DNA of 64,000 bases from assembly GCF_002113885.1 (NCBI RefSeq), contig NW_018480005.1, positions 157,299 through 221,298 on the forward strand, written 5' to 3'. The DNA comes from Mizuhopecten yessoensis (Eukaryota). Both the position numbers and the translations under genes were made by a program. Each line of letters starts with the position of its first letter. Positions within the stretch are counted from its first letter, which is position 1. The notes beneath the pieces were generated by a model. That model did not search any database, was not told where the DNA came from, and worked only from the letters and a program-made list of their open reading frames with translations. This document shows, one piece after another, positions 839 to 43,063 of this stretch.

Positions 839-985
839 ACTTACCCGATGTTTCTTCAGAGCAGTCTCTTAAATGTTTCATTCATTTAATAAACCTTTTT
901 ACTTAACTGAGGAATGGTTAAAGTGCTGACCTGTGATCTATCACGTTTATATATACTCATACAGTGAAACAGATGTGTCGGATTA
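839..985 (-). promoter_or_regulatory. Putative promoter and non-coding first exon (module P1) of a gene continuing off the left edge
   Basis: Minus strand: CATCTG E-box (970-975), 14-bp spacer, TATATATAAA (946-955), then donor ATCGG|GTAAGT (839-844). Same layout as the module upstream of TIMP-A. Confidence 0.6.
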
Positions 986-3090: not shown

Positions 3091-3180
3091 ACTTACTTCC
3101 CTGTTGAATTTATTTAAGTGCTGGTTGCTATTCTATCATATCTATTTATACTTATATAGCGACACAGATGTATCGGATTA
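3091..3180 (-). promoter_or_regulatory. Second copy of the promoter / non-coding exon module (P2)
   Basis: Minus strand: CATCTG (3165-3170), 14-bp spacer, TATAAATA (3143-3150), GTAAGT donor (3091-3096). Flank 3180-3420 is visibly homologous to 985-1300. Confidence 0.55.
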
Positions 3181-5683: not shown

Positions 5684-5867
5684 TTAAAGTATGCCCACCA
5701 GACAGCTAAAAGCTGACCCTCTGCACGAATGTCCTGACGCGGAGGGTAAACACCGCAGCCTGTTGTAACATTTTATTCTTGTAAGATCACCGGGGTACGT
5801 GCAGGCATTAGGAGGAGGCGCAATAATGCCACAGTTCCCGCTTCATCACTATAACAACAATATCGGT
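5684..5867 (-). pseudogene. Orphan, frameshifted TIMP terminal exon (C-terminal domain)
   Basis: Translates GNCGIIAPPPNACTYPGDLTRIKCYNRLRCLPSASGHSCRGSAFSCLVGIL*, clearly paralogous to the TIMP-A last exon (..CTYYGDYTKIQCFNKLRCIPSASGKSCRWSS..). There are in-frame stops just upstream, the conserved Trp is Gly, and no other exons were found. Confidence 0.8.
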
Positions 5868-9568: not shown

Positions 9569-12500
9569 TTAGCCAATTGTGATATCTCCGGGTCTTCCAC
9601 ACACTGGGGATGACCACCTGCACGATTTCCCGGACGCGGAGGGTATACATCTTAGCTTGTTAAAGCACTGGATCTTAGTATAGTCACCGTAATACGTACA
9701 TGTAGTAGGCCGATTAGAGCCACATCCATCCTTTGATTCCCCGCAGTACACTATCTGTAACCATAGAAAACTTAATTGTGCATACTTTACATATGGTTAT
9801 TAGTCATCCTGATAGTTTTTTTGAAATTTATGTATTTTTTGTCCTAAATGAAAACATTTGTACGTAAACTTCCAGACAGAGGATATCAGAATGGTACACC
9901 CCTGGATCGAGAAAAGAATCAGTCTGCTGTTACCCACTGCATGATCGTAAGAGGCGACTTAAGGCTAGTGATGTAAGTATAATGAGGTACATGTTATTGT
10001 ATTACAACTTTTAATAATTTAAACAATCAAACTATTATGCTATATGTAAGCAACAAACCGTGATGATGCCTTACAGTATCCAATTCTAATAGATATGTTA
10101 ATGTTAAGTATGTAATGATATCTCAAATAAAATCCACTAATGTAAAGATAACTTTTTATATTATTGATACGTGTCACTGTGCCTTTTACAGGAATATATT
10201 ATTTATAATCACGACACAACCGGTCAGAAAATACTGCGCCAATGAAATACAGAAATACACATGCGAAAACCGTTTTTGCCAGCATAGGTTTAAGATAAAA
10301 AAAAAAAATACAAACATCCATTTTAGTTACATATCATTTGGTATACAGTATTTATTGGGGAAATTGTAACTGGATAAATCTTTCTCTATGTCACTAAAGA
10401 ACTAACTTTACGACTTTTGATTTACTTTTGACGTATCTTAAACTTCATTTTAATTTCGAAGTCATCGAAATATAACAATGTACAATCTAATTAAGATTCG
10501 ATATATATGTGTTCCCTATAATGACGTGTCACATGAAAAATGACGTGTAACATGAAGAACGTTACCTTGCACGTTTTACAGTTGATGTCGTTCAATCCTG
10601 GGAAACTGTATCTTCGGTTGGAATTATACTTTCGTTTGACTTCGTTTGTTACGGAGTTCTTGTTCAGGATAAGACTTTGGCAAAGCTGTATTTGGTAGGT
10701 ACCGTCATTATTGCTTTTGGCTACAAAACAAATCCAAGAAGAAAAGAGAATATTTCTTAAAAATATAGATCTAATTGGCAAATTAACTATGTTGTGATAG
10801 CTTTTGTAGAATCGTATTGGATCACGTTTGTCATTATCTGGTATTCTAGTGATTCAACAATCTGGCCATACCTGTCATCAGGTACTTTTCTTTCTTCACA
10901 AGCCCGGTGATGCCACACATCCCGCCATTGTTGGGAGTCTTCACTGTTATAACACCACTAATATTTCCCTGCCAAACCACATTAACAAAGTACCATCAAT
11001 AGTATAACATCGCTATTCAAAACATTTTACGAAAATGCCATTAAGCTTACATGTATCACGACACAATTGTTTTGCCTCGTCAGATCCTGTGGAAATATCT
11101 GAATATTTTATTAGCCTCTCCCTGTTGACCAATTAACTGCAAAGCCAGTTTCAGCTTTGGGTAAGTATTCAAGGAAGCAAATTCAGAATAATAAAATAAA
11201 TCTAAATTGTTGGGACAATCACTTCAATAACAAGGATGAAACATAGTATCATTACACAAAAATTGCACTTTCGGGATGTATTTGTGTATACAACATACTA
11301 TAAAATATATTAAACCAGACTATAGTTGTGACAGAAATATTAGGATTGGAGAAAATAACCATCCGTAATATTGAGGAAGTAGCAGATAAAACACTAGCCC
11401 TCGTTTAGATATTTTAGGTGTCTTACCCTCGGAGGTGCTTCGGGTTAGACACCATTTTGGTTTTACTTCGGGTAGGTTACATATGTCTCTGTTTCACAAT
11501 GAAGGTAGAATATTATTTATTCCGTCTTTATTTAGTTTAATCACAAATTTATCATAAGTAGCCTGGCCTGTTTTTTTGGCAATTGACCTTCTCCGTCGAA
11601 ATATAGTTTTGATGTTATCCTGACGTCATCGTATTATTTTGTTCCTATGTTATATATCAAACCCTACAGGCAGACAAAGAACTCATCACTTATCATATCA
11701 TGAACAGGTAAAACTTAAAACAATTTGTGAAAGATGGGAGAAAATAAATCAATGTTCCGAAATTTCCCAATAGCCTCGTTATGGTATCAAATACAAAATA
11801 AATCCATGCTCCGCACTTAACCAATAACCTCGTTATGGTATATCTGGATAAACGACGATTGTCTCCACTACCGACGAACCCTAATTTGGATGTTATAAAA
11901 ACAAAACCAAGAAAGTGATGCTTACTTTGAAGACCCTCCTCACTTTAACGTGATATATGTGATCGTCGTCCATTGAGGCTGCAGGGAGGACTTCTCTAAT
12001 TTTTCCGATGAAAACTGCAATATCAAACAAAAAGCTCTACACTGTATTGTAGATAACACTGTCATAAATGATGAAGTAACGATTAAAAAAAATAAAACGC
12101 CTACTATAGTTTCACAACTTCCATTAAAAGCATTGCTGGAAAATTTACATTAAATGCTGATGGTCAAATATCTACACGAGGATCTAAAAACGAGTTAGGT
12201 TTACTCATGAGATATCGTTTAAAGTATCATGCTGCTGTGGAAAGTATCAACAGTACTGATCAACAATTGAAACGTACGTAAAATATTATTATGTTTCTAA
12301 ATTTTAACATACTATGATGGTGATACCCTATCTTTGTAGATATATATTTTACTTTGTAGCATCTATATTTCAACTTATAGCACCGTTGATGACCTTTTGT
12401 GATTAAAACACGAGCGCCCGGCGTACTTAAACTGATATATCTTGTGTATAATCGAGAACTCATTCAACAAGATTTAGACCGTTGTTATTCGACTTTGTAG

Positions 12501-25200: not shown

Positions 25201-26785
25201 ACGGTATTACTCCGCTATAGCTCCGGCCAACGGTGGCACATCGGTAGAACAACGGCTGAGCCTCGGTATAACATCGGCGGCGCATCGGTAACACTGAGAT
25301 GACAGAAAAGTGGTATTCGGTAGCACATCGGCTCTTACATTAGTAGAACAACGATTTTCGCGCCGTTGTTAATTCTTTGCTCTGATTTGGTCCAGGCGAG
25401 GAACATCGGTAGTGTGTGACAGGCCCTTTATAGACGGATGATTGCCACACACATGTGTTAGTTATAGACGGATGATTGCCATACCGGGTGTAAGTTATAG
25501 ACGGATTATTGCCATACCAGGTGTAAGTTATAGACGGGTGATTGCCATACCAGGTGTAAGTTATAGACGGATGATGGACATACCAGGTGTAAGGTATAGA
25601 CGGATGATGGACATACCAGGTAATAGTTTTAGACGGGTGATTGCCATACGCAGGTTGTTCATATAGACGGGTGATTTCTATACACAGGTAGTAGTTATAG
25701 ACGGGTGATTACCATACACAGGTAGTAGTTATAGACGGGCGATTACCATACACAGGTGTTATTTATAGATGGGTGATTGTTATACGGTAGTGATTGCTGA
25801 GGCAGGTTTGACTGTATTTACTATCTCACACTTCTGTGACTTCACAGTCAGCAGCAGCAAGACGATCGACCTGTGTCAGAGTTACGTGGTTGAGTGGAGT
25901 CTCTTGCCGCTTCCTAAGAGTGTGTACAAGTGGCGTGCTGCGGACGATACCTTCATAGGGAACAAAAACTGCGATAACTGTGAGGTAACCTAACTGCGTG
26001 TTTTTGCTATTGTATGACTAACTGCTTTTTATATGTCTCCATATTGTCCGGACCTTTCTATTGTCCCATTTTCTCCACATCTCTCAACTTCTTTCCCTCT
26101 TTGTCTGTAAGTGTCTCAATATATTTCCGCTGCTTAACTTTTCCCCTCGATACCTTGCTTTCACCTCTTCATTTAACTATAACTTCACTGCGTTATTAAC
26201 GGTTCACTATCTCACTTTTTCCTATTGTCTCTTTTTACTTCTGCACTGTCTCGCTAACTTACCATTGCCTCGACCGCCTTCTCTCGAAGAGGCCGAGTCA
26301 CTGAGAGATAGAGAGACAGACACCTGTCCTATATAACTATATTTCTAGTGTCTAGCTGTCTGTTCACTCTCGCTATCTGTCAAACTTTTCAACTTTTTCA
26401 ATATCTTTCCACTTTTCCGCAATCTCTCGAGTGTCTCTATATCCATTTTTTATCTTACTGTCATTCAATTGTCTCACTTCTTCTCCAAGGACTCGACCTC
26501 TTTTTCAAATGTCTCAAACTCTGTCTACTGGCTTTCTGTCATTCAAATGTCTCACTTTGTTCCCACGGTCCCAGAATTATTTACACATAATACCTTGTAC
26601 GTTGTATTTATCATTTACAGATAAATTATGGTACTCCGAAAAACACAGCAGAAGTATGTGACTACAACAGTCTCAGTTGCTGTCACCTCTATGAGCGATG
26701 TAACTACAATGAAAACCTCGGACAATGTAGCTGGGATAAACTTCCCCAAAAGGAAAGTGGAAAGGATTGTGAGGCTCCAGAGTAG
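22288..26785 (+). CDS. TIMP: TIMP-B: atypical TIMP-like secreted protein, 209 aa, 5 coding exons
   Basis: Exons 22288-22399, 23492-23598, 24715-24823, 25848-25984, 26621-26785; all GT-AG, phases 1,0,1,0 as in TIMP-A, total 630 nt with no internal stop. Protein: MLLTFAVLLVFGSARLSHSLCDPDVLHPQTALCNQKYAFKGKV...YEVNVMKVFK...TTKGSMQNGIPWLVVGTKYFMT...IDLCQSYVVEW...NCDNCEI...VCDY...CCHLYERC...GQCSW...DCEAPE*. HPQ..LC, VFK and G.CSW are TIMP motifs. Confidence 0.92.
22452..22512 (+). repeat. (GAA)n microsatellite in a TIMP-B intron
   Basis: About 20 GAA-type triplets downstream of the 22400 GTAAGT donor. Confidence 0.95.
22660..22865 (+). mobile_element. SINE / L2-type 3' tail remnant
   Basis: Ends TAAAGCGCTTTAGAG...GATAAGGCACTATATCAAAT, a typical L2/CR1-derived stem-loop tail. 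Confidence 0.5.
23840..24170 (-). mobile_element. Penelope-like GIY-YIG endonuclease fragment in a TIMP-B intron
   Basis: Reads PCDASLIGETERRFGVRFGEHRKD...KSANTDHVTQKNHVIDWNNSKVLDRE...RQIKEAIWM...LNRYEGAHRLSHIYD with a stop. Confidence 0.85.
25035..25816. repeat. 33-bp minisatellite ending in a Tc1/pogo MITE-type terminus, with an internal insertion
   Basis: Unit GTTATAGACGG(A/G)TGATTGCCATACCAGGTGTAA; the array ends GGCAGGTTTGACTGTA (25801-25816). Confidence 0.9.
25180..25430. mobile_element. GC-rich truncated MITE (PIF/Harbinger-like end) interrupting the minisatellite
   Basis: Repeated CATCGG motifs; ends GTGTGACAGGCCCT followed by TTA. Confidence 0.45.
26030..26575. repeat. Pyrimidine-rich degenerate repeat in the last TIMP-B intron
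   Basis: Recurrent TGTCTCA(A/C)(A/C)TT motifs. Confidence 0.55.
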
Positions 26786-28824
26786 GAATAGGAGGACCTG
26801 TGATGAAGGAAGAACTAACTTTCATATTCTTGTTACAGATTTACCATAATTATGTTAATGTTCAATATTTTTCTCCTTGAGGACGTTTTTATCTGATCTT
26901 TATCACCCCTATTACGGTATGTGGAATAGCTAGGTGATTAATAGTATTGTGAATATTAGGACCACAGTTATTTAGTCATAGGGGTGGTCAGGTATGTATT
27001 TTACCTTTCTATTGTAATCCTGTACAATAGATGTTCATTACGTCTTACTCGGAGGATGCATTAAGTGCATTCACCTGTCCAGGTGAGTTGACTTACTTGT
27101 TTCACGGGTAGCACTATCAGGTTTGCTGTACATAAGGGTCAACAGATTTCCAGCAGTAGATGCCACACTATTTGCTGGTTTAGACAAACTCTCACTTCTG
27201 ACATTCCGGTCCCTTGGGGTTGGTTGAATTAAGACGACGGTTGAATTGCGCCAAAAGCTGTCCGGTGTAATTTATAGACCCTACCATGTTGACATTCTTA
27301 TAACTGGTATTAGTCCTTTGGCAGAGAATATAAGTGAGCATAACCCCTGGAGTTTCGGAGAGTCTGAGCTTCATGTATGATCACCTCAAAAACTGTTTAC
27401 CGAAAAGATATATCCATCATTTTAAACAGAGCATCCTGTGGAAATGGTTGTATGATTGTGTAATAAATAAATACATGTATAATATACCAGATAGCTCTTG
27501 TCCTCTATTCCTTGTTGGCTATTAACGTGACAATGACACCGACCAGAGTCGTGTGCGTACTCGCTACACGTACATCTCGCAAAAGGAAAATTGGTTTTTG
27601 AAAAATGTACATATACGGTTGTCAAAAGGACAACCTTGCGAAAAATGGTTAATGGGGTGACAAAATGATAGTGCATCATTCCTTATTTTCCCATTTTATG
27701 TCAATAACTTGGATGCATTTATAGAATTTAACTTTATTCAGATAAAATTCGTTGAATCAAAATATTAAAAGTAGCCGTATACGTAGTAACAGTCACTGAC
27801 ATCATATTAACATTGTGTTCCCTAACACGAAGTTGTTATATTGCCGTATCTTTTGAGAACTTTTACTTATCCCTACATTCAGTTTAAAGTCTCGTTAAAT
27901 TTTGTACTGATCTCACATTCCTTATTGTACTTTCATAATCTACGTTCATTCAATGCCATATTTACATAAATACTATTAGTTATGTAATGGATACAACGGT
28001 AATCTGTATATTGAGGGCGTACAATATTGTTATTTCCAAAGTAATCGTTTCAGGCTAATACTTTTACTTATATTTTACAATTCCATCATATGTACTCGTA
28101 TTAAGTATTAATAATCGCATAGTTTTTTTCATAGAATAAATAGCTCATCGGAAACGAACACAATCACACCAGATACTGTCATGCACAAGCTACCTGTAGG
28201 GATAGTCATATGTCATTTAAAGGTTAAGAGCGGAGGCCATAGTTAGGACAGAAAATATCAAAATAAATCAATTCCGCACAAAATTCTTTATTTTTCAAGT
28301 ATTCACAAAATAAAACTAGGTCGACTTTATTTGCTCCGACTTTTGAGCTTGAGATTTAAATCAAAGTTATTAGCTGTAGATTTTGTAAAACAGTTTTAAT
28401 TGTTAACATTTCCAACATGAACCCCTCAATCAGTGTCTTCTGAGACATTTACTGCCCGATGTAAACTATATTAAGTATAACAATACATACACCGAAGTGC
28501 TTTAATGCACCAACACGTGGTCATTGAGCAGCGTCTATAAACTGGAACAACTACGTTGCCCTAGATATTAGCCCGGACATCATGTCCCCAGTTTGTATGA
28601 TTTGCATTGGAAAAGTGATCTTCCGCTCGGTTAAATTTTATCGGACCCAGAACACAGGTATAGGAGTACAGTTATCTTTTCCAAAGCACCAGTTGTCGGA
28701 TTTCAGCTTTTTTCCTGATTAGTTAGGTAATTCACAGTTGCTAAGACAAGGGACGAAAGCATGTCAGAGCGCAATCCAAAGCTAGACCCTGTCTGGTTAA
28801 GTATAACCCTTACATATTATATAA

Positions 28825-29155: not shown

Positions 29156-30267
29156 GTTATCAAACCATTGAAATGTGATATCAGTTTTTTCATTGATGAT
29201 GTTATGTTAACTCCTGTATCTTTATTTTTAAAGGAAATGTTTGAAAGCATCGATATTTGCAGAATTTGATGAGCTCTGCTATCAATTAAATACGCACATT
29301 TGTTACCGGCTTTCTAAGGAATGGTGTATGTTATTTATAGCAATCCTGTTGTCTTAATCTGGCAAATTCTTAGACAAAATACTTCTCAGACCCGAAACTA
29401 ACGACTATTAAGTCTTAAATAAACTTCAGAACGGACCACATTCAATCATTCAAAGAACAGAAATGCAACGTAATATATATTTGAGTTCAATACATGTTAC
29501 CTAGAGTGTTTGGTAACCAAAGCATGCATGGAACTATATTTGTCAACCTGGAATATATTTCCTGGATAAAATTATAATTGAAATCTCAATGAAATTATGA
29601 AAAATAGCATCAAACAACTCACTTTGATTGACAGTATAACCGTTTTAGTTTGAGTAGGGATTAATGAAGGTAACAGACATGTGTATAAACGTATGTCTGA
29701 AGTAGGTTCATTTCTTAGGTTTAAAGACACTTGAGGAATATTTAGGGATAGAAACCAACACTGTCATAACATATGATGGTATTTGAAAATTAAAAATGGG
29801 ATAAGAAAGTAAAAAAAAGGTGAATAAATAACAAATGCAAACATAAAAATATTGTTTGTATACCTTTTTTTACAATTATCACCAAGAAGAAGTATGTAAT
29901 CGGTTAGTTTAACAGCAAAACGGCATTATTTTGTTGTTAAATAAAATGAATGATATCAAAATTAAGTTGTGCTGCCAAGGACCGTTTCAGGGCAGTATTA
30001 CCATAACCAATACAAAATAACTCCGACAGATAAACTATAAATTACCCGAGAAGTGACCCCTTCTTGTATCGACACCATCTTTCTATAATCTGAGCTGTTC
30101 CAAAATACACAAGATCCGATATAAATAATTTAAGGATTGAATTAATTCTTTTCTATTTCATACAATCAGGTACATTGACAAAATGCCGTTCAATCCTTAT
30201 ATTGAAAATTTAAATGTTAAGGTACTTTTGACCTAAATACATATATTTCCGTATATTTTCAAAATAA

Positions 30268-30615
30268 ACTTAACGTCACTAAAAGTGACTGTGGCGTCAG
30301 TGCAAACGAGATTACTGTAACAGCTTAATGTCACCAAATGTGTCTGTGGCGTCAGTGCAAACGAGATTACTGGAACAGCTTAATGTCACCAAATGTGTCT
30401 GTGGCGTCAATGCAAACGAGATTACTGGAACAGCTTAATGTCACCAAATGTGACTGTGGCGTCAATGCAAACGAGATTACTGGAACACCTTAATGTCACC
30501 AAATGTGTCTGTGTTGTCAGTGCAAACGAGATTACTGGAACAGCCTAATGTCACCAAATGTGTCTGTGTTGTCAGTGCAAACGAGATTACTAGACCAGCT
30601 TAACGTCACCAAAAT
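30268..30615. repeat. 55-bp tandem repeat (~6 units)
   Basis: CAGCTTAATGTCACCAAATGTGTCTGTGGCGTCAGTGCAAACGAGATTACTGGAA at 30321, 30376...; single inverted copies at ~33515-33570 and ~15500-15560. Confidence 0.95.
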
Positions 30616-31099
30616 TCTACAGTTTTTAGTTTAAACATATTATATTGCAATATAATTACAAAAGGATTGGGCACAAGTTATTGCAACTTATAAACGCCCT
30701 TTCCATACTGCTTTACAACATATAAATATATGCAATTTCTAATAATACATAAATTAATTTACAACAAACACATACTTGAGAGAGAGAGATAGAGAGAGAG
30801 ATTTTAGTATTTTAGTATTTCATGATTAAAACTCTAGATTAAGATAACAAACTTATAACAATGTTATATAACAAACTTATCAAGCTTATAACAATGTTAA
30901 CCCAGTTGGACTATAAACACATTCATTACGCACTACAAATTGTTCATTTCAATCCTGAAAAACTTTCCTCTTTCGTAATCACGCAGATCCTCTTTTCCGT
31001 AGTCTTTCATCTTAATAATACCAGCTCGGCCAACAATGTTATCTTAGCAGTTGAATAAGTAATAGCACAATATTACAGTAACATCGGATAATGAAATTG

Positions 31100-32190
31100 A
31101 AACAATTAAATAAATAAGTAAATAAATAGCGTCGTGCCCTTTTCTTTAATAATGAAATTATGAACATATAAAAAGACTTCCGAATTTGTGTCACGCGACA
31201 AGTCTTCATTTCCAAATAAAAGCAAATCTAAATCACATAGTACCTCTAAACTCAAATAATTTACTCGCTGAAAAAGAATGTTTCTTTCAATACTGTAACG
31301 GCGACATTGAAAGAAAAAGTGATAAATATTTTCACAAATATGTCCACAAATACAGCTAGGGGTTTCCACAAGGTTCACACGGAATAAGTCATAATTTTGA
31401 TAACTGCAACGGTGTCTAAGCTTCGTGTGAATAACATTTAACCTATGGTCGCCGTTACCAAAGTACGAAGGAGGAATAAATTGATCGTTGGGTTTCAGGG
31501 AATTTTTAAAGATATTCAATGAAGCTGATGACCTAATAGAGTTGTCGAGGGTATTCCAACAGCGAAGAGTGGACGCTAAAAAAGAAGAGTTTGTTGTTGA
31601 TATTTTGAAATACGGGATTCTATTATCATTTCTGTTTCGATAAGGATAGCGAACTAGATCTTGTACAGTCTGGTGTTTGATTAGCATGCATTTTAAACAA
31701 GAGTTGAAGCTTTCTTCTTTTTCTTCTAGCAGACAATGTTTCTAAACCTGTTTCAAAATTTAAAGAATATATGCTAGCATATGATGGCAGACCTGTTATA
31801 ATTCGAGCGGCTTCACGTTGGGCTTTTTCCAACTTTTCTGATTCGAAACTAGAGCATCCATCCCACAATTCGCATGTATATTCTAAAATAGGTAAAATAA
31901 AGGTTCGGTAAATTCTTAATAGGGCGTTTCGTTTTAATAGAAATTTTAATTTTTTTTAAGACATTTTTTTTCATAACTGAAGAATACATCGCTTCTATAT
32001 GATCCCCCCATTTGACACTGGAGTTGAGAGTAACACCTAAATGCTTGTGACTATCTGAAAAGTCTAAAATGTTCCCGTCAAATTCTAATTCTAATAATGC
32101 ATCTACGTCATTTCTACTGGAGAAAATAAAGTACATCAGTTTTGTCCCGATTAAACGTTACCAGCCAAATTCTTCATGTTTAACCGATCA
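31100..32190 (-). mobile_element. 5'-truncated CR1/L2-clade LINE (3' end of ORF2)
   Basis: HKHLGVTLNSSVKWGDHI, WDGCS..E.EKLEK.QREAARIITG, CWNTL, CICG..CE...HFFFQC across frameshifts; (TTTA)n-like tail near 31106-31128. Confidence 0.92.
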
Positions 32191-33931
32191 TCAATGTTTC
32201 CCAAACTATTTAGACATCAGATATCTTATTCCGAGAATTATAATTCAAAATCGATATCATATCGAGAGATATATATTATAGCGTGAATTGGTGAGGAGAG
32301 ACGGTCGCTAATTTAAATATCTTGCAAATGTCTTTTCCAAAACGCGGATTCAAATCCTCTCGAAAACGTTTAAAGCAATTCACCTCTAACCAACCCCAAT
32401 GTTTTTTCAAACATTATCGAATCCCGAGTTATATATTTCACCAAAGTGTACAATCATACATCGATTATATCTATTCTACCTAGTAAAAAGTAATGACAGT
32501 TATTGTCCATATGCCTATGATAAGTTAGGTGACCCAGCAAATCTGATTATAGAAATCCGGCTGTTCTAACTCGCGCTAGCATTTGTCATGTGATCACTAT
32601 TATGTCTTTGTTTCACTACAATCTGCTTGTTTTTATCAACTCTGACCCTGTGAGCGGTTGATCTGTTTATCATTTTCAATCGCCATTTGATAGACAGGCG
32701 ATAAAAGGTCAACACTGACGTCATGTTTTACACCAGATGTTCATTTCAATCAATCAAATCCACCAATCTATAGACATCGCTCGTCAACACAGGAAATAGG
32801 CATTTCGCAGATTTACAAAGACTATTTCAAGTCACCTTCGCGGTTAGTTCAGCGGAACATTCTCATCGTGAGCTTGACAGGTTTTAAGTAAAAAACATTT
32901 GCCCGCTAGCAAATCCTCAAAAACATGGGGGATACCTTTATTCGACAAATTAAACCAGACCCACGACTCACTTGTTTACCGGTAGATTTGCTGAGGGAGG
33001 TTTTTTGAGAGCGTTAGTCTGATGGCAAAAAAAACATGCACGCGTAGGGTCTATCGTCCAATATTCCATGCTTATTTATCAATGAAAAGTGCCGTTTCAT
33101 CGCAAACGTAGTAGAATTCCAAACGAACCATATACGCATAACGCTTTTCAGAAAGTCTCCCCGTATTTGAGCAGTGATTGATTATTCTTTTACAGTCATT
33201 TGTAAATAAAGGAGTGGTCACATGGTCTTATAGATACTTCAGTAGAAATGACTAGACATTTAATTAAATTTTTATAATGTAGAATAGATATAATTTACAT
33301 GTTTGTGTATATTATGGTTGAATATATAATTAGGAATTAGAAATATTAGTAAAACATATCATGAAATAGTAATAAAAAACTTTTCAAATTATTTTTTTCC
33401 AAATGTGAACGTGTTCCTACTACACACCCACATGATATAAGGAAATACGCTGATTATTTATAAATAAATCAGGCAATGCTGATTAGATCTCAAAAATCAG
33501 AAAATCGTTAGAAACATTTTGGTGACGTTAAGCTGTTCCAGGAATCTCGTTTGCACTGACGACACACACACATTAATATCGAAAATATAAAGGTATACAG
33601 CTCTATGAAGAAACTGATGTCACGTGGTTATTCATAAATGTAATGTAAATTTGTTTGTTCGAAGATGTGTTTGAAAAGTAATCGCTGCATTTTTACAATA
33701 TATGCTATAATAAAGTATAATAACCGATCGCTATATTTTTCTAAAATCGTATTTGCCACCCAAAATGATTTCACAAATATCTTTTAAACATTAGCAATGT
33801 ATTAACTTAAATGTTATGATGACTCTTAGGTTCATGTAATAATAAAAGAAAACATCTGCTAGAAGAATTCAGCTCTGTGTTGTCAATATATTGTTGAAAG
33901 ATTTTATAGTTTATTGTGAAACATCCTACCA

Positions 33932-34385
33932 GTGTTTCGTGTTGGGGAATCTTCAATTGCCAAAATGGTTGGCGTTTTGAAAAAGTACGAAGGAATCTTA
34001 AATTCTCCTAGATACCAGACGGAAATTGTAAATGATGTAGATATCATCTCGGAGTGTCTGATTTTTCCAAACAAGGAATACATTATACAACAGGACTTGT
34101 CTCCTTGTCATAATTCAGTGTCGTCGAAACACTTTTTCAGCACCTAGGGAATCGAGATACTACCGTGGCCCGGAAACAGCCCTGACTTGAATCCCATTGA
34201 GAACATAGGGAACGACAGGAAAAGAAGCATTTCCAAGAAATTTCCTATCAAAAGCGTGAACTATGGAAGGAAATCCAGCCTCAGTGGTATGCTCTCTAAG
34301 GGGACTTTTTGAAGAAACTAATCCACGTTATGCCAAGACGGATTCGCGCAGTAATTAATGTAAGTGATGGAACCGTAAAGCAATC
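33932..34385 (+). mobile_element. Tc1-family DDE transposase remnant
   Basis: IIQQDLSPCH...*GIEILPWPGNSPDLNPIENI...MPRRIRAVI with a stop and frameshifts. Confidence 0.9.
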
Positions 34386-34844
34386 AATTAATTAATAAGA
34401 AAATCCATCGGTTTTTTATTTTTCATTGACATTCTTAAAATCAATAAATGTGACATTAATCTTTGCAAAACAAACATGTGACATCAATTTCTTCAAGGAC
34501 ATGTATATGCATTTAGGTTAAAAATACCTAAACATTTAAAATGTAAAGGTCAGTGTTGAACGGTATTTTGTCCATGTTCATGACGGTTTGAATTTGAATA
34601 GAATCAATTCAATCCTTGAATTATTTGTTTCGACTCATGTGTTAAACAGTTCAGATTATAGAAAGATGTCGTCCATAGATGACGTGTCACTTGTCGGTCA
34701 TTTTATAGTTTTACGTATACAATACTTTCATTCTCGCTTTCACACTTTTCTTTATGAGAGCTTGCTTAATATTAATACAAAACAATCACTTAAAGATATC
34801 TGGCGGATTTCTTTGGTATTTGTTATGTTAATACGGTGCTTGAA

Positions 34845-35289: not shown

Positions 35290-35653
35290 GTAGTTTGTTA
35301 TTTGCCAGGGTTTTGTGGTAAGGTTTGCCGACATACCCGCTTCTTGTCACTGCCAAAGTGATAAACGGGGTGGGGCAGGGCATCATTTGATCCATCTCTA
35401 CGGCTGTCATGAATAAAAAAAGTTCAGCATCAATAACCTCGGCCGTAACTGGGGAATCGCCCTTCTGGCATCATCGTTGGTTGATCTAGGTGCCCAGGAG
35501 GCTTTTGGTGTGCTCTAAGATGCGGCGATATCAAACCCTGGGGATGTGTATTGTTATGGGATGAAGTATGTCCCTGGGGGACACGCTGTCACCCTCGGGA
35601 TGGACGTGCTCGCTATGATTCTGGGCGTAGCACTGTTTTTAAGAAGGAAATAG
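35290..35653 (+). pseudogene. 3' fragment of an MFS transporter paralogue (copy 3)
   Basis: Near-identical to ~42700-43063 (CGTAACTGGGGAATCGCCCTTCTGGCATCATCGTTGG...) but with indels and a TAC>TAA stop; truncated 5' next to the Penelope fragment. Confidence 0.88.
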
Positions 35654-36338
35654 ACATATTCCTATAGCGTTAAAAATAGCTGTGTGTTATACGAGTACAA
35701 TTGTGATATAATCCTTCGATTTATAAGTCAATTTCTGATGCTTATTATCTGTGGTAATTATGTACGCTTTGTATGTGTTACTCTGTTACATTTATCGTTG
35801 ATTTTAGCTGTGTATATTTAACATTGAGCCATTAGTTCTGAAAAACTATTTTTTCGATAAAGCATATGAAAAATTGTCACGTTCATGGCAAGGTGCAAAC
35901 CAAAAGGCGATACTGAACAATATTGCACATTAAATTAAAATACACATTGTTAGAAATGCGAGTATGCAGAGAAAGGAAAATAGTTGAATAATAGTTCAGC
36001 AAACAGTTCATCACCAATGAGGCCACGTGAGGTGTGAATCGGCCTTCGGAATTCCGAAACGATTTATACAAGTACTATTATTCCTCTGAAGATAGTACGT
36101 TTTGTCCATACCTTACAGACTTCACTGCCGGTATTTTCACCTGCTGTATTCCAGTGCATGTCTTTAGAGTCCTAATGTGAAATATAGTATTTTATTTATT
36201 TGGTTAAAGAATATCTAGAGATCTGAAACTTTGATAATATATTTAATGAATCAAAGCCTCAATATATCATTTAAACTTATTTGTTAAGAATATCAGTACT
36301 AACTGGTTTCACAATAAAGTCAATTTGTTTTATTACAG

Positions 36339-37545
36339 GTCTTGGTTCTTTGTTCAATTACATGGTTGCCCTCAATACCAACGCCATCAACTTCCACCCA
36401 AAACACCGCGGAAAAATCGTGGGCATCCTCAGCGCTTCTTTTGCAGGCAGTTCGTCGGTTTTCGCGGCATTGTATTTCCATGTAATTGGGAAGAAGGACC
36501 CTAAGAGTGGCGACAGTTTTTCCACGCTGATGATTGTGTTCAATGTGTGTTTTGTGGTCCTGGAAATTTTGTGTATTGCGTTTTTGCGAGTGTATCCACG
36601 TGTTAAACCCATAGACAACATCATATCTGATGTCAGGGCAGAAAGCCTGTGTGAACAACCGTACGATAAAAGCCTCGAGGGCGTTAAAAATAGTACGGAA
36701 GTCATCCATCGCATTTATGCGAATGTTTCCACGTATGGAGCTCACTGACCCCATTATACCGGAATTGAGGTCAGCTGACACGCATAAAAGCGGCACACCA
36801 GCGTACAACAGATATATTGTTGGTGAAAATAATATGACGAACGCCATCCAAAGTTCCGAGAATATTGGTGATACAAAGGCATCTGATATAGATTTAGTAG
36901 TTCCAGATGACACCACATGGTCAGATGGTACGTCTTTATTAACTTTCCTCATCACACTTGACTTTCAGCTCCTGACGTTGATATTTACGTTAACGTCTGC
37001 AGTTGGTCAGGTTTTCTTGATTACCCTCTTACAGACTACGGCGGCATCAGGAATGGACAGTCAAAACGCGTTAATCGTTCTAATAATTCCAATCATCAAT
37101 GCTGTTATCAGCGCCGCCATCGGGATAATTTCTGATCATTTTCACCAAAGAGTTCCCCGAATGTGTCTCCTCACAATGGGAACTGTGGCGTTTATTATTT
37201 GCCAGGGTCTAGTGATAGGACTGGGTGACAAATACCAGGCACTTGTTACTGCTTCACTGATAAACGGGGTGGGACAAAGCATCATTTGGTCCATATCTCC
37301 GGTGGTCATGAGTGAAATGTTCAGCATCAAGAACCTTGGTCGCAATTGGGGCATCGCTCTGCTGATGTCTTCGCTGGTAGGTTGTGCAGCCCTAGAGTTT
37401 TTTTTACGACGCGACGATATCCATCCCTGGGGAAGTGTACTGTTATGGAATGAAGTATGTTCGTGAGGGACACGCCGTAATCCTCGGGATGGTCGTACTC
37501 GCTATGATTTTAGGTGTGACTCTGTATGTACGGAGAAGGAGATAG
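36339..37545 (+). pseudogene. Frameshifted copy of MFS transporter exon 3 (copy 2)
   Basis: Acceptor TTACAG|GT at 36338, then GLGSLFNYMVALNTNAINFHPKHRGK..., a frameshift in the central loop (~36620-36745) and a deletion/frameshift near 37400. No exon 1 or 2 was found upstream. Confidence 0.85.
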
Positions 37546-40682: not shown

Positions 40683-43063
40683 ATGACAATGGCGGATCAG
40701 AGGTCGGCACGGTACTTTACCGTGATGAAGTGGATTGGACTGGCGATTGGATGTGCCGCCAAGTTTGTGTCTGGGTCTTTATTCGTGTTCAACTCCTACG
40801 AAGATGCTCTCAAAACCACATTCAACTTCACCGCCAAAGAGGGTAAGACTTAGTAATTAACACAAAACCACGATTTACAAAGTCATCATTATCGAATTTC
40901 CCTACATAAATGTTGGTGATGTACATAATTTCCATAATTTGAGTGAAGGTACATGACTGAATGCCTTTTGCTTGGTATGCCCTCATTTCTTGTTATCTGA
41001 TTTATGTCGACTTCATTTTCTTTCTTATTATACCAGTTTCCTTGTGAGCAATACATAAGTAGGCGATAATCCCATGATGTTGACCCATGTTGTCGTCTTT
41101 CGTGTGCCTCGATGCTTTTAATTGTTGACAAAGAGACTGTTAGTGACGTTTTGCTTAGAAAAACCTTTTTTTCCAGTTCAGCTTCAATCGTCGTTCCTTA
41201 ACATCGGCCTTGGGATTGGGTTCCTGCCGGGAATGTTCTACGACAGATTCGGACCCCAATGGTGTTCGGGGGCGGGGCTGGTTCTGTCCCTGGCCGCATA
41301 CCTTCTTCTATGGAGTACCACCAGGTCTATCGCGTTCTACAGCTCGCGTAGCTGGCTCATGGCGATATATTTCTTCCTTTGTGGTGAGTGCTGGTTGTAA
41401 AGAATTACAGATATGTGTTATGTAACGGGTGGCATGTTTTTTTTTCCATTAATTTTATTAATGACAGATAACGGTTAGAGTTTAGCGGAATAAGTGTTAT
41501 TTTTACATTTTACTGCTAGTGTTGTAAAATACCTATATGCGTTTACCTGACTACAAGCTATCGGCTACACTATTAATAACTTATCAATGTTTAAGATGGT
41601 GTGATAATGCTTTTCAGTATGTCAAGTCAATTTTGTTTATTATAGTGTCATATATCACAATTATATCGTACAAGTATATAGTTACACAGTATAAAAACAT
41701 ATAGTTACATAACAGGGATCAATCATCTTAATGTTAAAATATATAGACCATATCATAATTTTGTTAAGAACAGCTATTATGCATAATAAATTAATAAATT
41801 AAAGCAAACTATCACGTGTGCCAATCCAGAGAGCAGGTGATTGGGACAGTCCCTACCTACCTACCTAACAAACTCCTGGATTTTGTCCTTACATATTAAA
41901 TACTATAATAGTTAAAAGTTTTCTTTAACATTTCCTGTATATGTTCTGTTGCAGGTATTGGTTCTGTGTTCACCTATATGGTCGCCCTCAACACGAACGT
42001 CATAAACTTTCATCCAAAACACCGAGGGAAAATCGTTGGTATCCTCAACGCGTTTTTTGCGGGCAGCCCATCAGTATTCGCAACATTTTATTTCCATGTA
42101 ATTGGGAAAGATGACCCAAAGAGTGCCGACAGTTTTTCCACCTTAATGGCGGTGTTCGCCGTGTGTTTTGTGGTCATCGATATTCTGTGTGTTGCCTTCA
42201 TGCGAGTGTATCCTCGTATTGAGACCACAGACAAAACGATACCGGATGTAAGTGTACATGACGTGCGTAACGACGGCGTTCAAATTGACAACAAATGCTT
42301 CATAGGTGACGATGATAAATCAGCAATCTCCGATGATATTGTAGTGTCTAATGACATCCAAATTTCTGAAAATGCGATTGAGACAAAGGCATCTGCTACA
42401 GAATCAGTGGTTTCCAATGTTGATCAAAGTTCTGATGAGGTGTCAATATTAACTATCCTCACTACACTGGACTATCAGTTGCTGACGTGGTTATTTACTT
42501 TGGCGTCTGTTGTTGGTCTGGTTTACACAATCGCCCTAACACAGACCACGTCAGCACTGAAATTGGACAGTCATAACGCCGACATCGTTCTGGTCATTCC
42601 CATCACCAACGCTGTCATCAGTGCCGCGGTTGGTGTGATTTCTGACCGCTATCAACAAAGGTTACCCCGTCTTGGGATCCTCATTGCGGGGGTAACGACG
42701 TTTATTATTTGCCAGGGTCTCGCGGTAGGGTTGGCCGACAATTACCCGACGCTTGTCACTGCCACAGTGGTGAACGGGATTGGACAAGGATTCATTTGGT
42801 CAATCGCTCCAGCTGTCATGAGTGAAATGTTCAGCATCAATAACCTCGGTCGTAACTGGGGAATCGCCCTTCTGGCATCATCGTTGGTTGGTCTAGGTGC
42901 CCAGGAGGCTTTTGGTGCGCTCTACGACGCGGCGATATCAAACCCTGGGGAAGTGTACTGTTATGGGATGAAGTGTGTCCGTTGGGGACACACCGTCACC
43001 CTCGGGATGGCCGTGCTCGCTATGATTCTGGGCGTGGCACTGTATATACGGAGACGAAGATAG
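40683..43063 (+). CDS. Major facilitator superfamily transporter (Nodulin-like/MCH1/NFD4-like), 491 aa, 3 exons
   Basis: Exons 40683-40842, 41177-41383, 41955-43063; GT-AG, phases 1,1, total 1476 nt. MTMADQRSARYFTVMKWIGL...GFLPGMFYDRFGP (MFS motif A)...HRGKIVGIL...GVISDRY...SEMFS..NLGRNWG; about 12 hydrophobic segments with a central acidic loop. Confidence 0.92.

What the first reader, a model, noticed from the sequence alone, without database searches (positions are those of the whole stretch)
9569..26785. Head-to-head TIMP pair with opposite net charge and a shared promoter module: candidate two-component secreted matrix system
Seen: the two genes are divergently transcribed, about 6.7 kb apart at their promoters, with identical exon phases. 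A hand count of the mature proteins gives TIMP-A about 28 K/R vs 13 D/E (net about +15) and TIMP-B about 18 K/R vs 27 D/E (net about -9). Both sit behind the same E-box/TATA module. Inference: co-expressed, oppositely charged secreted paralogues could pair or coacervate, with one guarding the matrix from proteolysis and the other cross-linking or scaffolding it (for example in byssus, shell or ligament). This is speculative.
Basis: partly seen in the sequence, partly recalled or inferred. Interest (0 to 1): 0.7.

Follow-up and report, generated by a model that had tools for sequence, protein, structure and literature searches.

The report
Oppositely charged neighbouring scallop TIMP genes
Two neighbouring scallop genes of the TIMP protease-inhibitor family encode one strongly basic and one acidic secreted protein, a contrast kept in three scallop genera, but the head-to-head layout is peculiar to this species and nothing yet shows that the two proteins work together.

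Summary
Both five-exon genes are real, with intron phases 1,0,1,0. They equal RefSeq proteins XP_021341256.1 (TIMP-A) and XP_021341274.1 (TIMP-B) of Mizuhopecten yessoensis. Predicted TATA promoters lie 6.7 kb apart and share a 12-nt E-box core.

New here:
- A (and a neighbouring paralogue, A') match the known byssal cross-linker Sbp8-1 of Chlamys farreri: basic, with two extra C-terminal cysteines at the same positions.
- B lacks the inhibitory Cys1-Cys70 bridge in all three genera examined.
- B and A are adjacent, and their opposite charges are kept, in Argopecten irradians and Ylistrum balloti. There the two genes lie in tandem on one strand. Only B is inverted in the Yesso scallop, so the head-to-head layout is incidental.
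- Both genes are under purifying selection (dN/dS about 0.2).
- B had no reads in four RNA libraries of unknown tissue. A could not be tested.

Both genes are already catalogued: Ma et al. 2023 list A as a "branch TIMP" and B as a "pseudo TIMP". Functional pairing or coacervation remains untested speculation. The scan also noted B separately (s1-512437).

The parts
9569..13934 (-). TIMP-A coding region (5 coding exons: 13934-13811, 12014-11926, 10968-10872, 10720-10566, 9754-9569). It encodes a 216-aa precursor. The mature protein starts CSC, has 14 Cys, net charge +15 and pI 9.3. It equals XP_021341256.1.
   Evidence: Pfam TIMP 59.4 bits, full length; best solved relative is TIMP-2, E 3.3e-8.
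14310..14386 (-). Predicted TIMP-A promoter and non-coding exon 1: E-box core CATCTGCTACAC at 14386-14375, TATATA at 14366-14361, donor GTAAGT at 14315-14310. The acceptor AG is at 13956-13955 and exon 2 starts at 13954.
   Evidence: The region aligns with the region upstream of the Y. balloti A orthologue and with other A-type promoters. No RNA evidence.
21095..21194 (+). Predicted TIMP-B promoter and non-coding exon 1: E-box core CAGCTGTTTCAC at 21095-21106, TATAAA at 21120-21125, donor GTAAGT at 21189-21194. The acceptor AG is at 22269-22270 and exon 2 starts at 22271.
   Evidence: Window 20902-21123 is 69% identical over 227 nt to the region upstream of Y. balloti B (E 3e-15). No reads in four RNA libraries.
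22288..26785 (+). TIMP-B coding region (5 coding exons: 22288-22399, 23492-23598, 24715-24823, 25848-25984, 26621-26785). It encodes a 209-aa precursor with 11 Cys, no Cys1 or Cys70 equivalents, net charge -9 and pI 4.8. It equals XP_021341274.1 (LOC110442135).
   Evidence: (Pfam TIMP 35.2 bits, N-domain only).
14387..21094 (.). The 6.7-kb stretch between the two predicted promoters. It has no N run and holds dispersed-repeat debris, including a solo 55-nt repeat unit at 15506-15561.
5702..5833 (-). Relic of an A-type last exon: 62% identical to A residues 171-207, with in-frame stops just upstream and no in-phase acceptor.
839..975 (-). A third copy of the A-type promoter module (CATCTGTTTCAC at 975-964, then TATATA and GTAAGT). 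It is the probable promoter of paralogue A', whose exons lie before the window start (contig positions 154528-139628).
3091..3170 (-). A degenerate fourth copy of the A-type module (CATCTG, 14 nt, TATAAA, then GTAAGT), without the full 12-mer.
41966..43060 (+). Intronless MFS transporter gene. It serves as the synteny anchor that shows only B is inverted relative to the other scallops.
   Evidence: 66% identical to the A. irradians MFS gene next to B; Pfam MFS_1, 62.3 bits.

Best explanation
This is part of an old tandem TIMP cluster (MFS | B | A | A-like) inherited by scallops, not a purpose-built bidirectional unit.

A and its neighbour A' are Sbp8-1-type TIMPs: basic, with the canonical N-terminal CSC, all 12 family cysteines, and two extra C-terminal cysteines. 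In Chlamys farreri those two cysteines polymerise the byssal protein Sbp8-1. A is therefore most likely a secreted byssal or foot-gland matrix protein that cross-links through free thiols (inferred by homology).

B is an ancient paralogue, about 30% identical to A. It lost the Cys1-Cys70 bridge and became acidic before the three genera split. It is kept intact by purifying selection and cannot inhibit metalloproteinases in the canonical way (inferred).

A local inversion of B alone produced the head-to-head layout. It probably happened in the Yesso scallop lineage, though the direction is not polarised.

Each gene keeps its own TATA promoter with a short non-coding first exon. The shared 12-nt E-box core is probably inherited from the ancestral gene and may place both genes under the same bHLH-type regulator (inferred). 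Whether the proteins meet or interact is not shown.
For: - Identity with RefSeq proteins.
- TIMP membership and fold.
- A and B are 29% identical, BLASTP E 6e-13.
- Orthologues: A in Y. balloti (62%) and A. irradians (55%); B in A. irradians (50%), plus an intact unannotated B in Y. balloti.
- Synteny: MFS(-) B(+) A(+) A-like(+) in both other genera, against MFS(-) B(-) A(+) A'(+) here once the window is flipped.
- Charges: A +13 to +17, B -9 to -11 in all three species. A' is +9.
- dN/dS is 0.18-0.26 for both genes.
- Sbp8-1 peptides translated from the published primers are CTCNPYP, SDIVIIGK, SQGVCGIT, VIECFNKERCVP and WTDNDC-stop. They match A at mature positions 1, 17, 64 and 161. The extra Cys lie at mature positions 163/185 in A and 164/186 in A', in the A. 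irradians A orthologue and in Sbp8-1.
- Promoter core.
- PMC10755359 supplement: A is a 'branch TIMP' in one orthogroup with XP_021341255.1; B is a 'pseudo TIMP' without an orthogroup.
Against: - No expression data exist for either gene in this species. B had zero depth on all five exons in four RNA libraries of unknown tissue, and A was not testable.
- Only about 45 residues of Sbp8-1 could be compared, so orthologue and co-orthologue cannot be told apart.
- The inversion cannot be polarised without Chlamys or an outgroup.
- The AlphaFold models are of low confidence (pLDDT 55 and 53), so disulfide pairing and free thiols are inferred from alignment only.
- The conserved charge contrast together with conserved adjacency is more than this 'legacy' view requires.
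Confidence: 0.62

Rival explanations
1. Functional two-component system. A and B are co-secreted from the same gland cells, and the basic and acidic TIMP-fold proteins bind or condense electrostatically. A then locks the assembly through its extra thiols.
For: - Opposite net charge held within narrow limits in three genera despite 40-50% sequence divergence.
- Adjacency conserved.
- Both genes under purifying selection.
- A shared 12-nt E-box core at both promoters in several species.
- A matches a byssal cross-linker.
- M. yessoensis B has an odd number of Cys (11), so at least one free thiol.
Against: - No co-expression or interaction data.
- B was silent in four RNA libraries.
- The head-to-head layout is not conserved.
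- Net charge density is modest (+0.08 and -0.05 per residue), and both are folded, disulfide-rich domains. Known coacervating adhesive proteins are disordered polyelectrolytes (own knowledge).
- TIMP paralogues differ widely in pI anyway. Sbp8-1 and Sbp7 are both basic (PMC5975577).
- The B orthologues have 10 Cys, so the free thiol is not conserved.
Confidence: 0.18
2. Unrelated functions. A acts in the byssus. B has moved to another matrix or role, such as an acidic shell or ligament matrix protein or an immune factor. The adjacency is only a remnant of tandem duplication.
For: - Tandem duplication is the main mode of TIMP expansion in Pteriomorphia, and these TIMPs serve immunity, shell, ligament and byssus (PMC10755359).
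- A and B are only about 30% identical, so the duplication is old.
- Outside the 12-nt core the promoters are lineage-specific.
Against: - The shared E-box core is conserved at both promoters.
- There are no expression data either way.
Confidence: 0.15
3. The divergent orientation is an assembly error in the short-read scaffold, and the true layout is tandem as in the other scallops.
For: - Two chromosome-scale assemblies of other genera agree on the tandem layout.
- B is flanked by copies of a dispersed 55-nt repeat in opposite orientation, at 15506-15561 and 30269-30613. Such repeats could mislead an assembler.
Against: - There is no N run anywhere between window positions 1 and 55508, so A, B and the spacer lie in one gap-free stretch.
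- The spacer also differs in length and content from the other species.
Confidence: 0.05

Closest known systems
Sbp8-1 (CF9441.24), atypical TIMP-like byssal protein of Chlamys farreri (Zhang et al. 2018, PMC5975577)
   Same: A and A' share several features with Sbp8-1:
- a TIMP fold with the 12 family cysteines plus two extra C-terminal cysteines at matching positions (163/185 and 164/186, against 164/186 in Sbp8-1);
- a basic pI;
- an N-terminal C-x-C;
- about 66% identity over the 35 residues in four of the five primer-derived peptides.
   Different: - Only primer-derived fragments of Sbp8-1 could be compared.
- Sbp8-1 ends at Cys186, whereas A continues for nine more residues.
- Foot-specific expression, presence in the byssus and polymerisation are shown for Sbp8-1 only.
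- No acidic partner is described for Sbp8-1.
Vertebrate TIMP-2 and TIMP-1 (PDB 1br9, 1uea)
   Same: - They are the best solved relatives of both proteins by sequence and by fold.
- The gene layout has five coding exons.
- A keeps Cys1-Ser2-Cys3 and the Cys70 equivalent.
   Different: - Identity is below 30%.
- A has two extra cysteines.
- B lacks Cys1 and Cys70, matches only the N-domain part of the Pfam model, and is far more acidic.
'Pseudo TIMPs' and 'branch TIMPs' of molluscs (Ma et al. 2023, PMC10755359)
   Same: Both genes are listed there by accession: A as a branch TIMP (HOG0038160, together with XP_021341255.1) and B as a pseudo TIMP. The paper also documents expansion by tandem duplication and five-exon structure.
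   Different: - That study had a single scallop, so B was left without an orthogroup. Here B has orthologues in two more genera.
- Charge, cysteine loss, adjacency and orientation are not discussed there: the main text has no occurrence of 'isoelectric', 'cysteine' or 'head-to-head'.
Complex-coacervate underwater adhesives, such as the sandcastle-worm cement proteins (own knowledge, not tested here)
   Same: Secreted proteins of opposite net charge, in an animal that makes an underwater holdfast.
   Different: Those are highly charged, low-complexity and largely disordered polyelectrolytes packaged together. A and B are folded cysteine-rich domains with modest net charge, and co-secretion is unknown.
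Bidirectional (head-to-head) promoter gene pairs
   Same: Divergent orientation in this genome.
   Different: - The predicted starts are 6.7 kb apart, each with its own TATA box.
- The orientation is not conserved in related genera.

Membership tests
TIMP family (Pfam PF00965) | Match to the family profile above the curated cut-off | tested here: met
   A scores 59.4 bits over profile positions 3-183 of 183. B scores 35.2 bits over positions 5-136 only. The cut-off is 23.1 bits. Single exons gave no match.
TIMP family (canonical inhibitor) | Mature N-terminus Cys1-x-Cys3 directly after the signal peptide | tested here: met
   This row is for A. A reads ...TVFG|CSCAPSPPH, and Cys23 aligns with TIMP-2 Cys1. 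The cleavage site itself is inferred.
TIMP family (canonical inhibitor) | Cys1-Cys70 bridge that forms the metalloproteinase-binding ridge | tested here: not met
   This row is for B. B has S-L-C-D-P in place of C-x-C-x-P and Q-N-G in place of the MCG cysteine. The same holds in the A. irradians and Y. balloti orthologues. A keeps both cysteines.
TIMP family | Twelve conserved cysteines (six disulfides) | tested here: inconclusive
   By alignment, A has the 12 plus 2 extra. B has 10 of the 12, plus 1 extra in M. yessoensis only. Pairing could not be read from the models, because the C-domains have pLDDT below 50.
TIMP / NTR fold | OB-type N-terminal beta-barrel like N-TIMP | tested here: met
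   The top Foldseek hits for both models are TIMP-2 and TIMP-1 (A: E 3.6e-9; B: E 2.2e-6). N-domain TM-scores by target are 0.6-0.7. The models are of low overall confidence.
TIMP family | Inhibition of matrix metalloproteinases | not testable with these tools
   This needs an enzyme assay with an untagged native N-terminus.
Sbp8-1-type byssal TIMP cross-linker | Two extra C-terminal cysteines at about mature positions 164 and 186, and a basic pI | tested here: met
   A has the extra Cys at 163/185 and pI 9.3. A' has them at 164/186 and pI 8.9. A. irradians A has them at 164/186 and pI 9.2. The Sbp8-1 positions come from the mutagenesis primers in PMC5975577.
Sbp8-1-type byssal TIMP cross-linker | Foot-specific expression and presence in byssal thread and plaque | not tested
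Bidirectional promoter pair | Divergent starts less than about 1 kb apart, with the orientation conserved | tested here: not met
   The predicted promoters are 6709 nt apart. The genes are tandem in two other genera.
Two-component coacervating adhesive | Opposite charge, co-secretion, and phase separation on mixing | tested here: inconclusive
   Opposite net charge is met and conserved. Co-expression was not testable: B was silent in four libraries. Phase separation cannot be tested with these tools.

The most novel reading that the evidence does not exclude
A basic Sbp8-1-type TIMP and a conserved acidic, bridge-less TIMP paralogue next to it form a co-regulated electrostatic pair. The two folded TIMP-fold proteins would dock or condense in the foot-gland secretion and then be locked by disulfide exchange. 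That would be a protease-inhibitor fold turned into a two-part structural glue, kept together in the genome since before the scallop genera split.
Probability: 0.15. Interest if true: 0.65.

Novelty: new variant of a known kind. Interest (0 to 1): 0.4.

Why it matters
TIMP expansion in pteriomorph bivalves and the use of a TIMP-like protein as a byssal cross-linker are already known. What is added here is a scallop-wide, selectively maintained neighbour of the Sbp8-1-type genes. That neighbour has lost the inhibitory disulfide and carries the opposite charge.

If the two proteins prove to be co-secreted and to bind, this would be a simple, recombinantly testable model. It would show how a folded inhibitor scaffold was turned into a paired structural material. 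It would also assign a function to one of the many uncharacterised 'pseudo TIMPs'.

If they do not, the locus is an ordinary tandem-duplication remnant with a lineage-specific inversion.

Tried and rejected
- Exon-by-exon Pfam and PDB searches gave nothing, because the exons are too short.
- The Pfam TIMP scan of the whole genome did not list this locus. It lists only the best candidates.
- The sigma-70 promoter and terminator scan is irrelevant for a eukaryote.
- Global alignment of the A and B promoter regions showed no homology beyond the motif level.
- Word searches with A, with B and with their joint profile found only five proteins in 5.8 billion. A charge survey of the wider scallop TIMP family was therefore not possible.
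- No paper text mentions the accessions. They appear only in a supplement.
- No indexed RNA run holds gene A. Reads of four RNA runs laid on B gave only partial hits to intronic repeats.
- The inverted 55-nt repeats flanking B were considered as an inversion scar. This was rejected as proof because the unit is a dispersed repeat with at least 378 candidate sites in the genome.
- The 479-aa open frame through the 45-nt repeat of paralogue A' was considered as a coding insert. Differences fall 22/37/10 on codon positions 1/2/3 (10 synonymous, 59 non-synonymous), so nothing shows coding constraint.
- ORFs with an RT-like YIDD motif in the spacer gave no Pfam match.
- No joined spliced sequence was handed to any search tool. 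Searches used exon references and then the database's own records P0001 and P0002. Exons were joined only inside scripts, to compute charge, local alignments and dN/dS.
- N runs were left untouched.
Full report
**What is there.** The window comes from a 988-Mb assembly of 82,659 contigs. The two proteins carry RefSeq names from Mizuhopecten yessoensis, the Yesso scallop.

I read both strands and built two five-exon models with GT/AG introns and phases 1,0,1,0.
- TIMP-A is on the minus strand: exons 13934-13811, 12014-11926, 10968-10872, 10720-10566 and 9754-9569, encoding 216 aa.
- TIMP-B is on the plus strand: exons 22288-22399, 23492-23598, 24715-24823, 25848-25984 and 26621-26785, encoding 209 aa.

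Single exons were too short for Pfam or PDB searches. I therefore aligned the two last exons by reference and ran that profile against the 1.84-billion-protein representative library. It returned P0001 and P0002, which are identical to my joined models. They are XP_021341256.1 'metalloproteinase inhibitor 1-like' and XP_021341274.1 'uncharacterized protein LOC110442135'. No joined sequence was given to a search tool; joining was done only inside scripts.

**Family.**
- Pfam TIMP (PF00965): A scores 59.4 bits over the whole profile. B scores 35.2 bits over the N-domain only. The cut-off is 23.1 bits.
- The best solved relatives of both are TIMP-2 and TIMP-1, by sequence and by fold. The AlphaFold models are weak (pLDDT 55 and 53).
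- A and B are 29% identical (BLASTP E 6e-13), so they are old paralogues.
- A keeps the N-terminal CSC and the Cys70 equivalent.
- B has S-L-C in place of C-x-C and no cysteine at the Cys70 position. Because the partner of Cys3 is retained, the lost pair is the inhibitory Cys1-Cys70 bridge.

**Charge.** Mature A has 28 K/R and 13 D/E, net +15, pI 9.3. Mature B has 18 K/R and 27 D/E, net -9, pI 4.8.

**Promoters.**
- The two ATGs are 8354 nt apart.
- Each promoter is followed by a short non-coding exon with a GTAAGT donor and an acceptor about 17-20 nt before the ATG.
- The composite pattern (E-box, TATA, donor) occurs four times in the window against 0.24 expected.
- The 12-mer CAKCTGYTWCAC, defined from the A and B copies, occurs three times in the window against 0.06 expected. 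It is also found on the gene strand at the A and B promoters of Ylistrum balloti and at the A promoter of Argopecten irradians.
- A. irradians B has CACCTG and a TATTTAAACCC box at the same place.
- Each promoter region is conserved with its own orthologue.
- Outside the 12-nt core, A-type and B-type promoters do not align.
- The 'same module' is therefore a shared architecture plus a short shared element, most simply inherited from the ancestral gene. No RNA read supports the starts.

**Relatives and synteny.**
- Word searches found A orthologues in Y. balloti (62%) and A. irradians (55%), and a B orthologue in A. irradians (50%).
- I modelled an intact, unannotated B orthologue in Y. balloti.
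- Fetching the loci and mapping all proteins gives MFS(-) | B(+) | A(+) | A-like(+) in both other genera.
- In the Yesso scallop, with the window flipped so that A reads forward, the order is MFS(-) | B(-) | A(+) | relic | A'(+).
- Order and neighbours are conserved. Only B is inverted. The head-to-head layout is therefore not a conserved feature.
- The stretch has no assembly gap.
- B is flanked by inverted copies of a 55-nt repeat, but that unit is dispersed genome-wide, so it proves nothing.
- The direction of the inversion cannot be polarised with these three genera.

**What is conserved.**
- Net charge: A orthologues are +13 to +17 (pI 9.2-9.4). B orthologues are -9 to -11 (pI 4.7-4.8). 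A' is +9.
- All B orthologues lack Cys1 and Cys70.
- Pairwise dN/dS is 0.18-0.26 for both genes, with dS saturated. B is therefore not decaying.

**Link to known biology.**
- Zhang et al. 2018 (PMC5975577) showed that Sbp8-1 of Chlamys farreri is a basic, foot-specific TIMP-like protein of byssal thread and plaque. It polymerises through two extra cysteines, C164 and C186. It did not inhibit type IV collagenase in their assay.
- I translated their published primers. This gives the Sbp8-1 fragments CTCNPYP, SDIVIIGK, SQGVCGIT, VIECFNKERCVP and WTDNDC-stop.
- These fragments match A at mature positions 1, 17, 64 and 161. A's extra cysteines lie at mature positions 163 and 185. A' and A. irradians A have them at 164 and 186.
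- A and A' are therefore Sbp8-1-type genes. Only about 45 residues of Sbp8-1 were available, so this is strong but not complete evidence.
- Ma et al. 2023 (PMC10755359) already list A as a 'branch TIMP' (in one orthogroup with XP_021341255.1, probably A') and B as a 'pseudo TIMP' with no orthogroup.
- They also document tandem duplication, the five-exon norm and structural byssal TIMPs.

**Expression.**
- No indexed RNA run holds gene A.
- Reads were laid on B with its predicted promoter (21000-26999). Four RNA runs from four studies were used, with 1.7-1.9 billion letters read from each.
- Depth was zero on all five exons and on the predicted first exon. The few reads laid were partial hits to intronic repeats.
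- The tissues are not given, so this shows only that B is not broadly expressed.
- From my own knowledge, the Yesso scallop attaches by byssus only when young. Silence in adult libraries would fit a foot-gland gene.

**Verdict.**
The byssal and cross-linking idea fits A. The charge contrast and adjacency are conserved, and a shared promoter element exists.
- Against it: the head-to-head arrangement is incidental, the promoters are separate, and B rather than A has lost the inhibitory apparatus. Co-expression, binding and coacervation have no evidence.
- The modest charge density and the folded, disulfide-rich nature of both proteins make classical coacervation less likely than simple electrostatic docking, if the proteins interact at all.
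- I put the functional-pair reading at about 0.15-0.2.

Noticed in passing
L001 4431-5646 (contig C76678 141729-142944, before the window start): Paralogue A' is an intact 213-aa model at contig positions 154528-139628. It carries a 45-nt tandem repeat of 27 copies (92% matches) that copies the end of exon 4 plus its GTAAGC donor. The frame stays open for 479 aa, with the 15-aa unit VSFPGKDEINCDKCK. Eighteen units keep AAG|GTAAGC, so many in-phase alternative donors exist. Differences fall 22/37/10 on codon positions 1/2/3, so nothing shows coding constraint. It is probably an intronic expansion, but isoforms with CxxC repeats are not excluded. Compare the '4C-repeat' byssal proteins of PMC9168380.
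   Followed up: partly
window 5702-5833 (-): A solitary A-type last-exon relic with in-frame stops upstream. A. irradians also has a lone A-like last exon between A and the next promoter module (L003 20225-20407).
   Followed up: partly
window 21190-21540 (+): The start of B's predicted first intron is a tandem repeat (periods 55 and 105 nt) in which GGTAAGTGC, the donor-site sequence, recurs about six times. This is a second case in this cluster of a duplicated exon-intron junction.
   Followed up: no
L004 10001-10063 (A. irradians): The annotated 239-aa B orthologue starts at an ATG only about 6 nt after the TATA-like box. The 26-residue N-terminal extension is therefore probably an annotation artefact. 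The homologous Met is residue 27.
   Followed up: partly
L005 3438-6332 (Y. balloti): An intact B orthologue (211-aa model, five exons) is not among the called genes of that assembly.
   Followed up: yes
window 30107-34642: A transposon-like element with 139-nt terminal inverted repeats (79% complementary). A 55-nt subterminal repeat (6.3 copies at 30269-30613) recurs at 33518-33574 in the opposite orientation. The unit is dispersed in the genome, with at least 378 candidate sites.
   Followed up: partly
window 35294-37542 (+) and 41966-43060 (+): One intact intronless MFS_1 transporter gene (41966-43060), plus fragmented MFS-like pieces upstream that look like a decayed duplicate.
   Followed up: partly
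window 22456-22512: A (GAA)19 microsatellite in B's first coding intron makes exon 1 read through into a poly-Glu open frame (the 84-aa ORF at 22288-22542). It is not part of the protein.
   Followed up: yes
P0003 (2137 aa): The last-exon profile also hit a 2137-aa protein with nine matching stretches (E 3.6e-8). It is presumably a repetitive cysteine-rich protein and was not examined.
   Followed up: no
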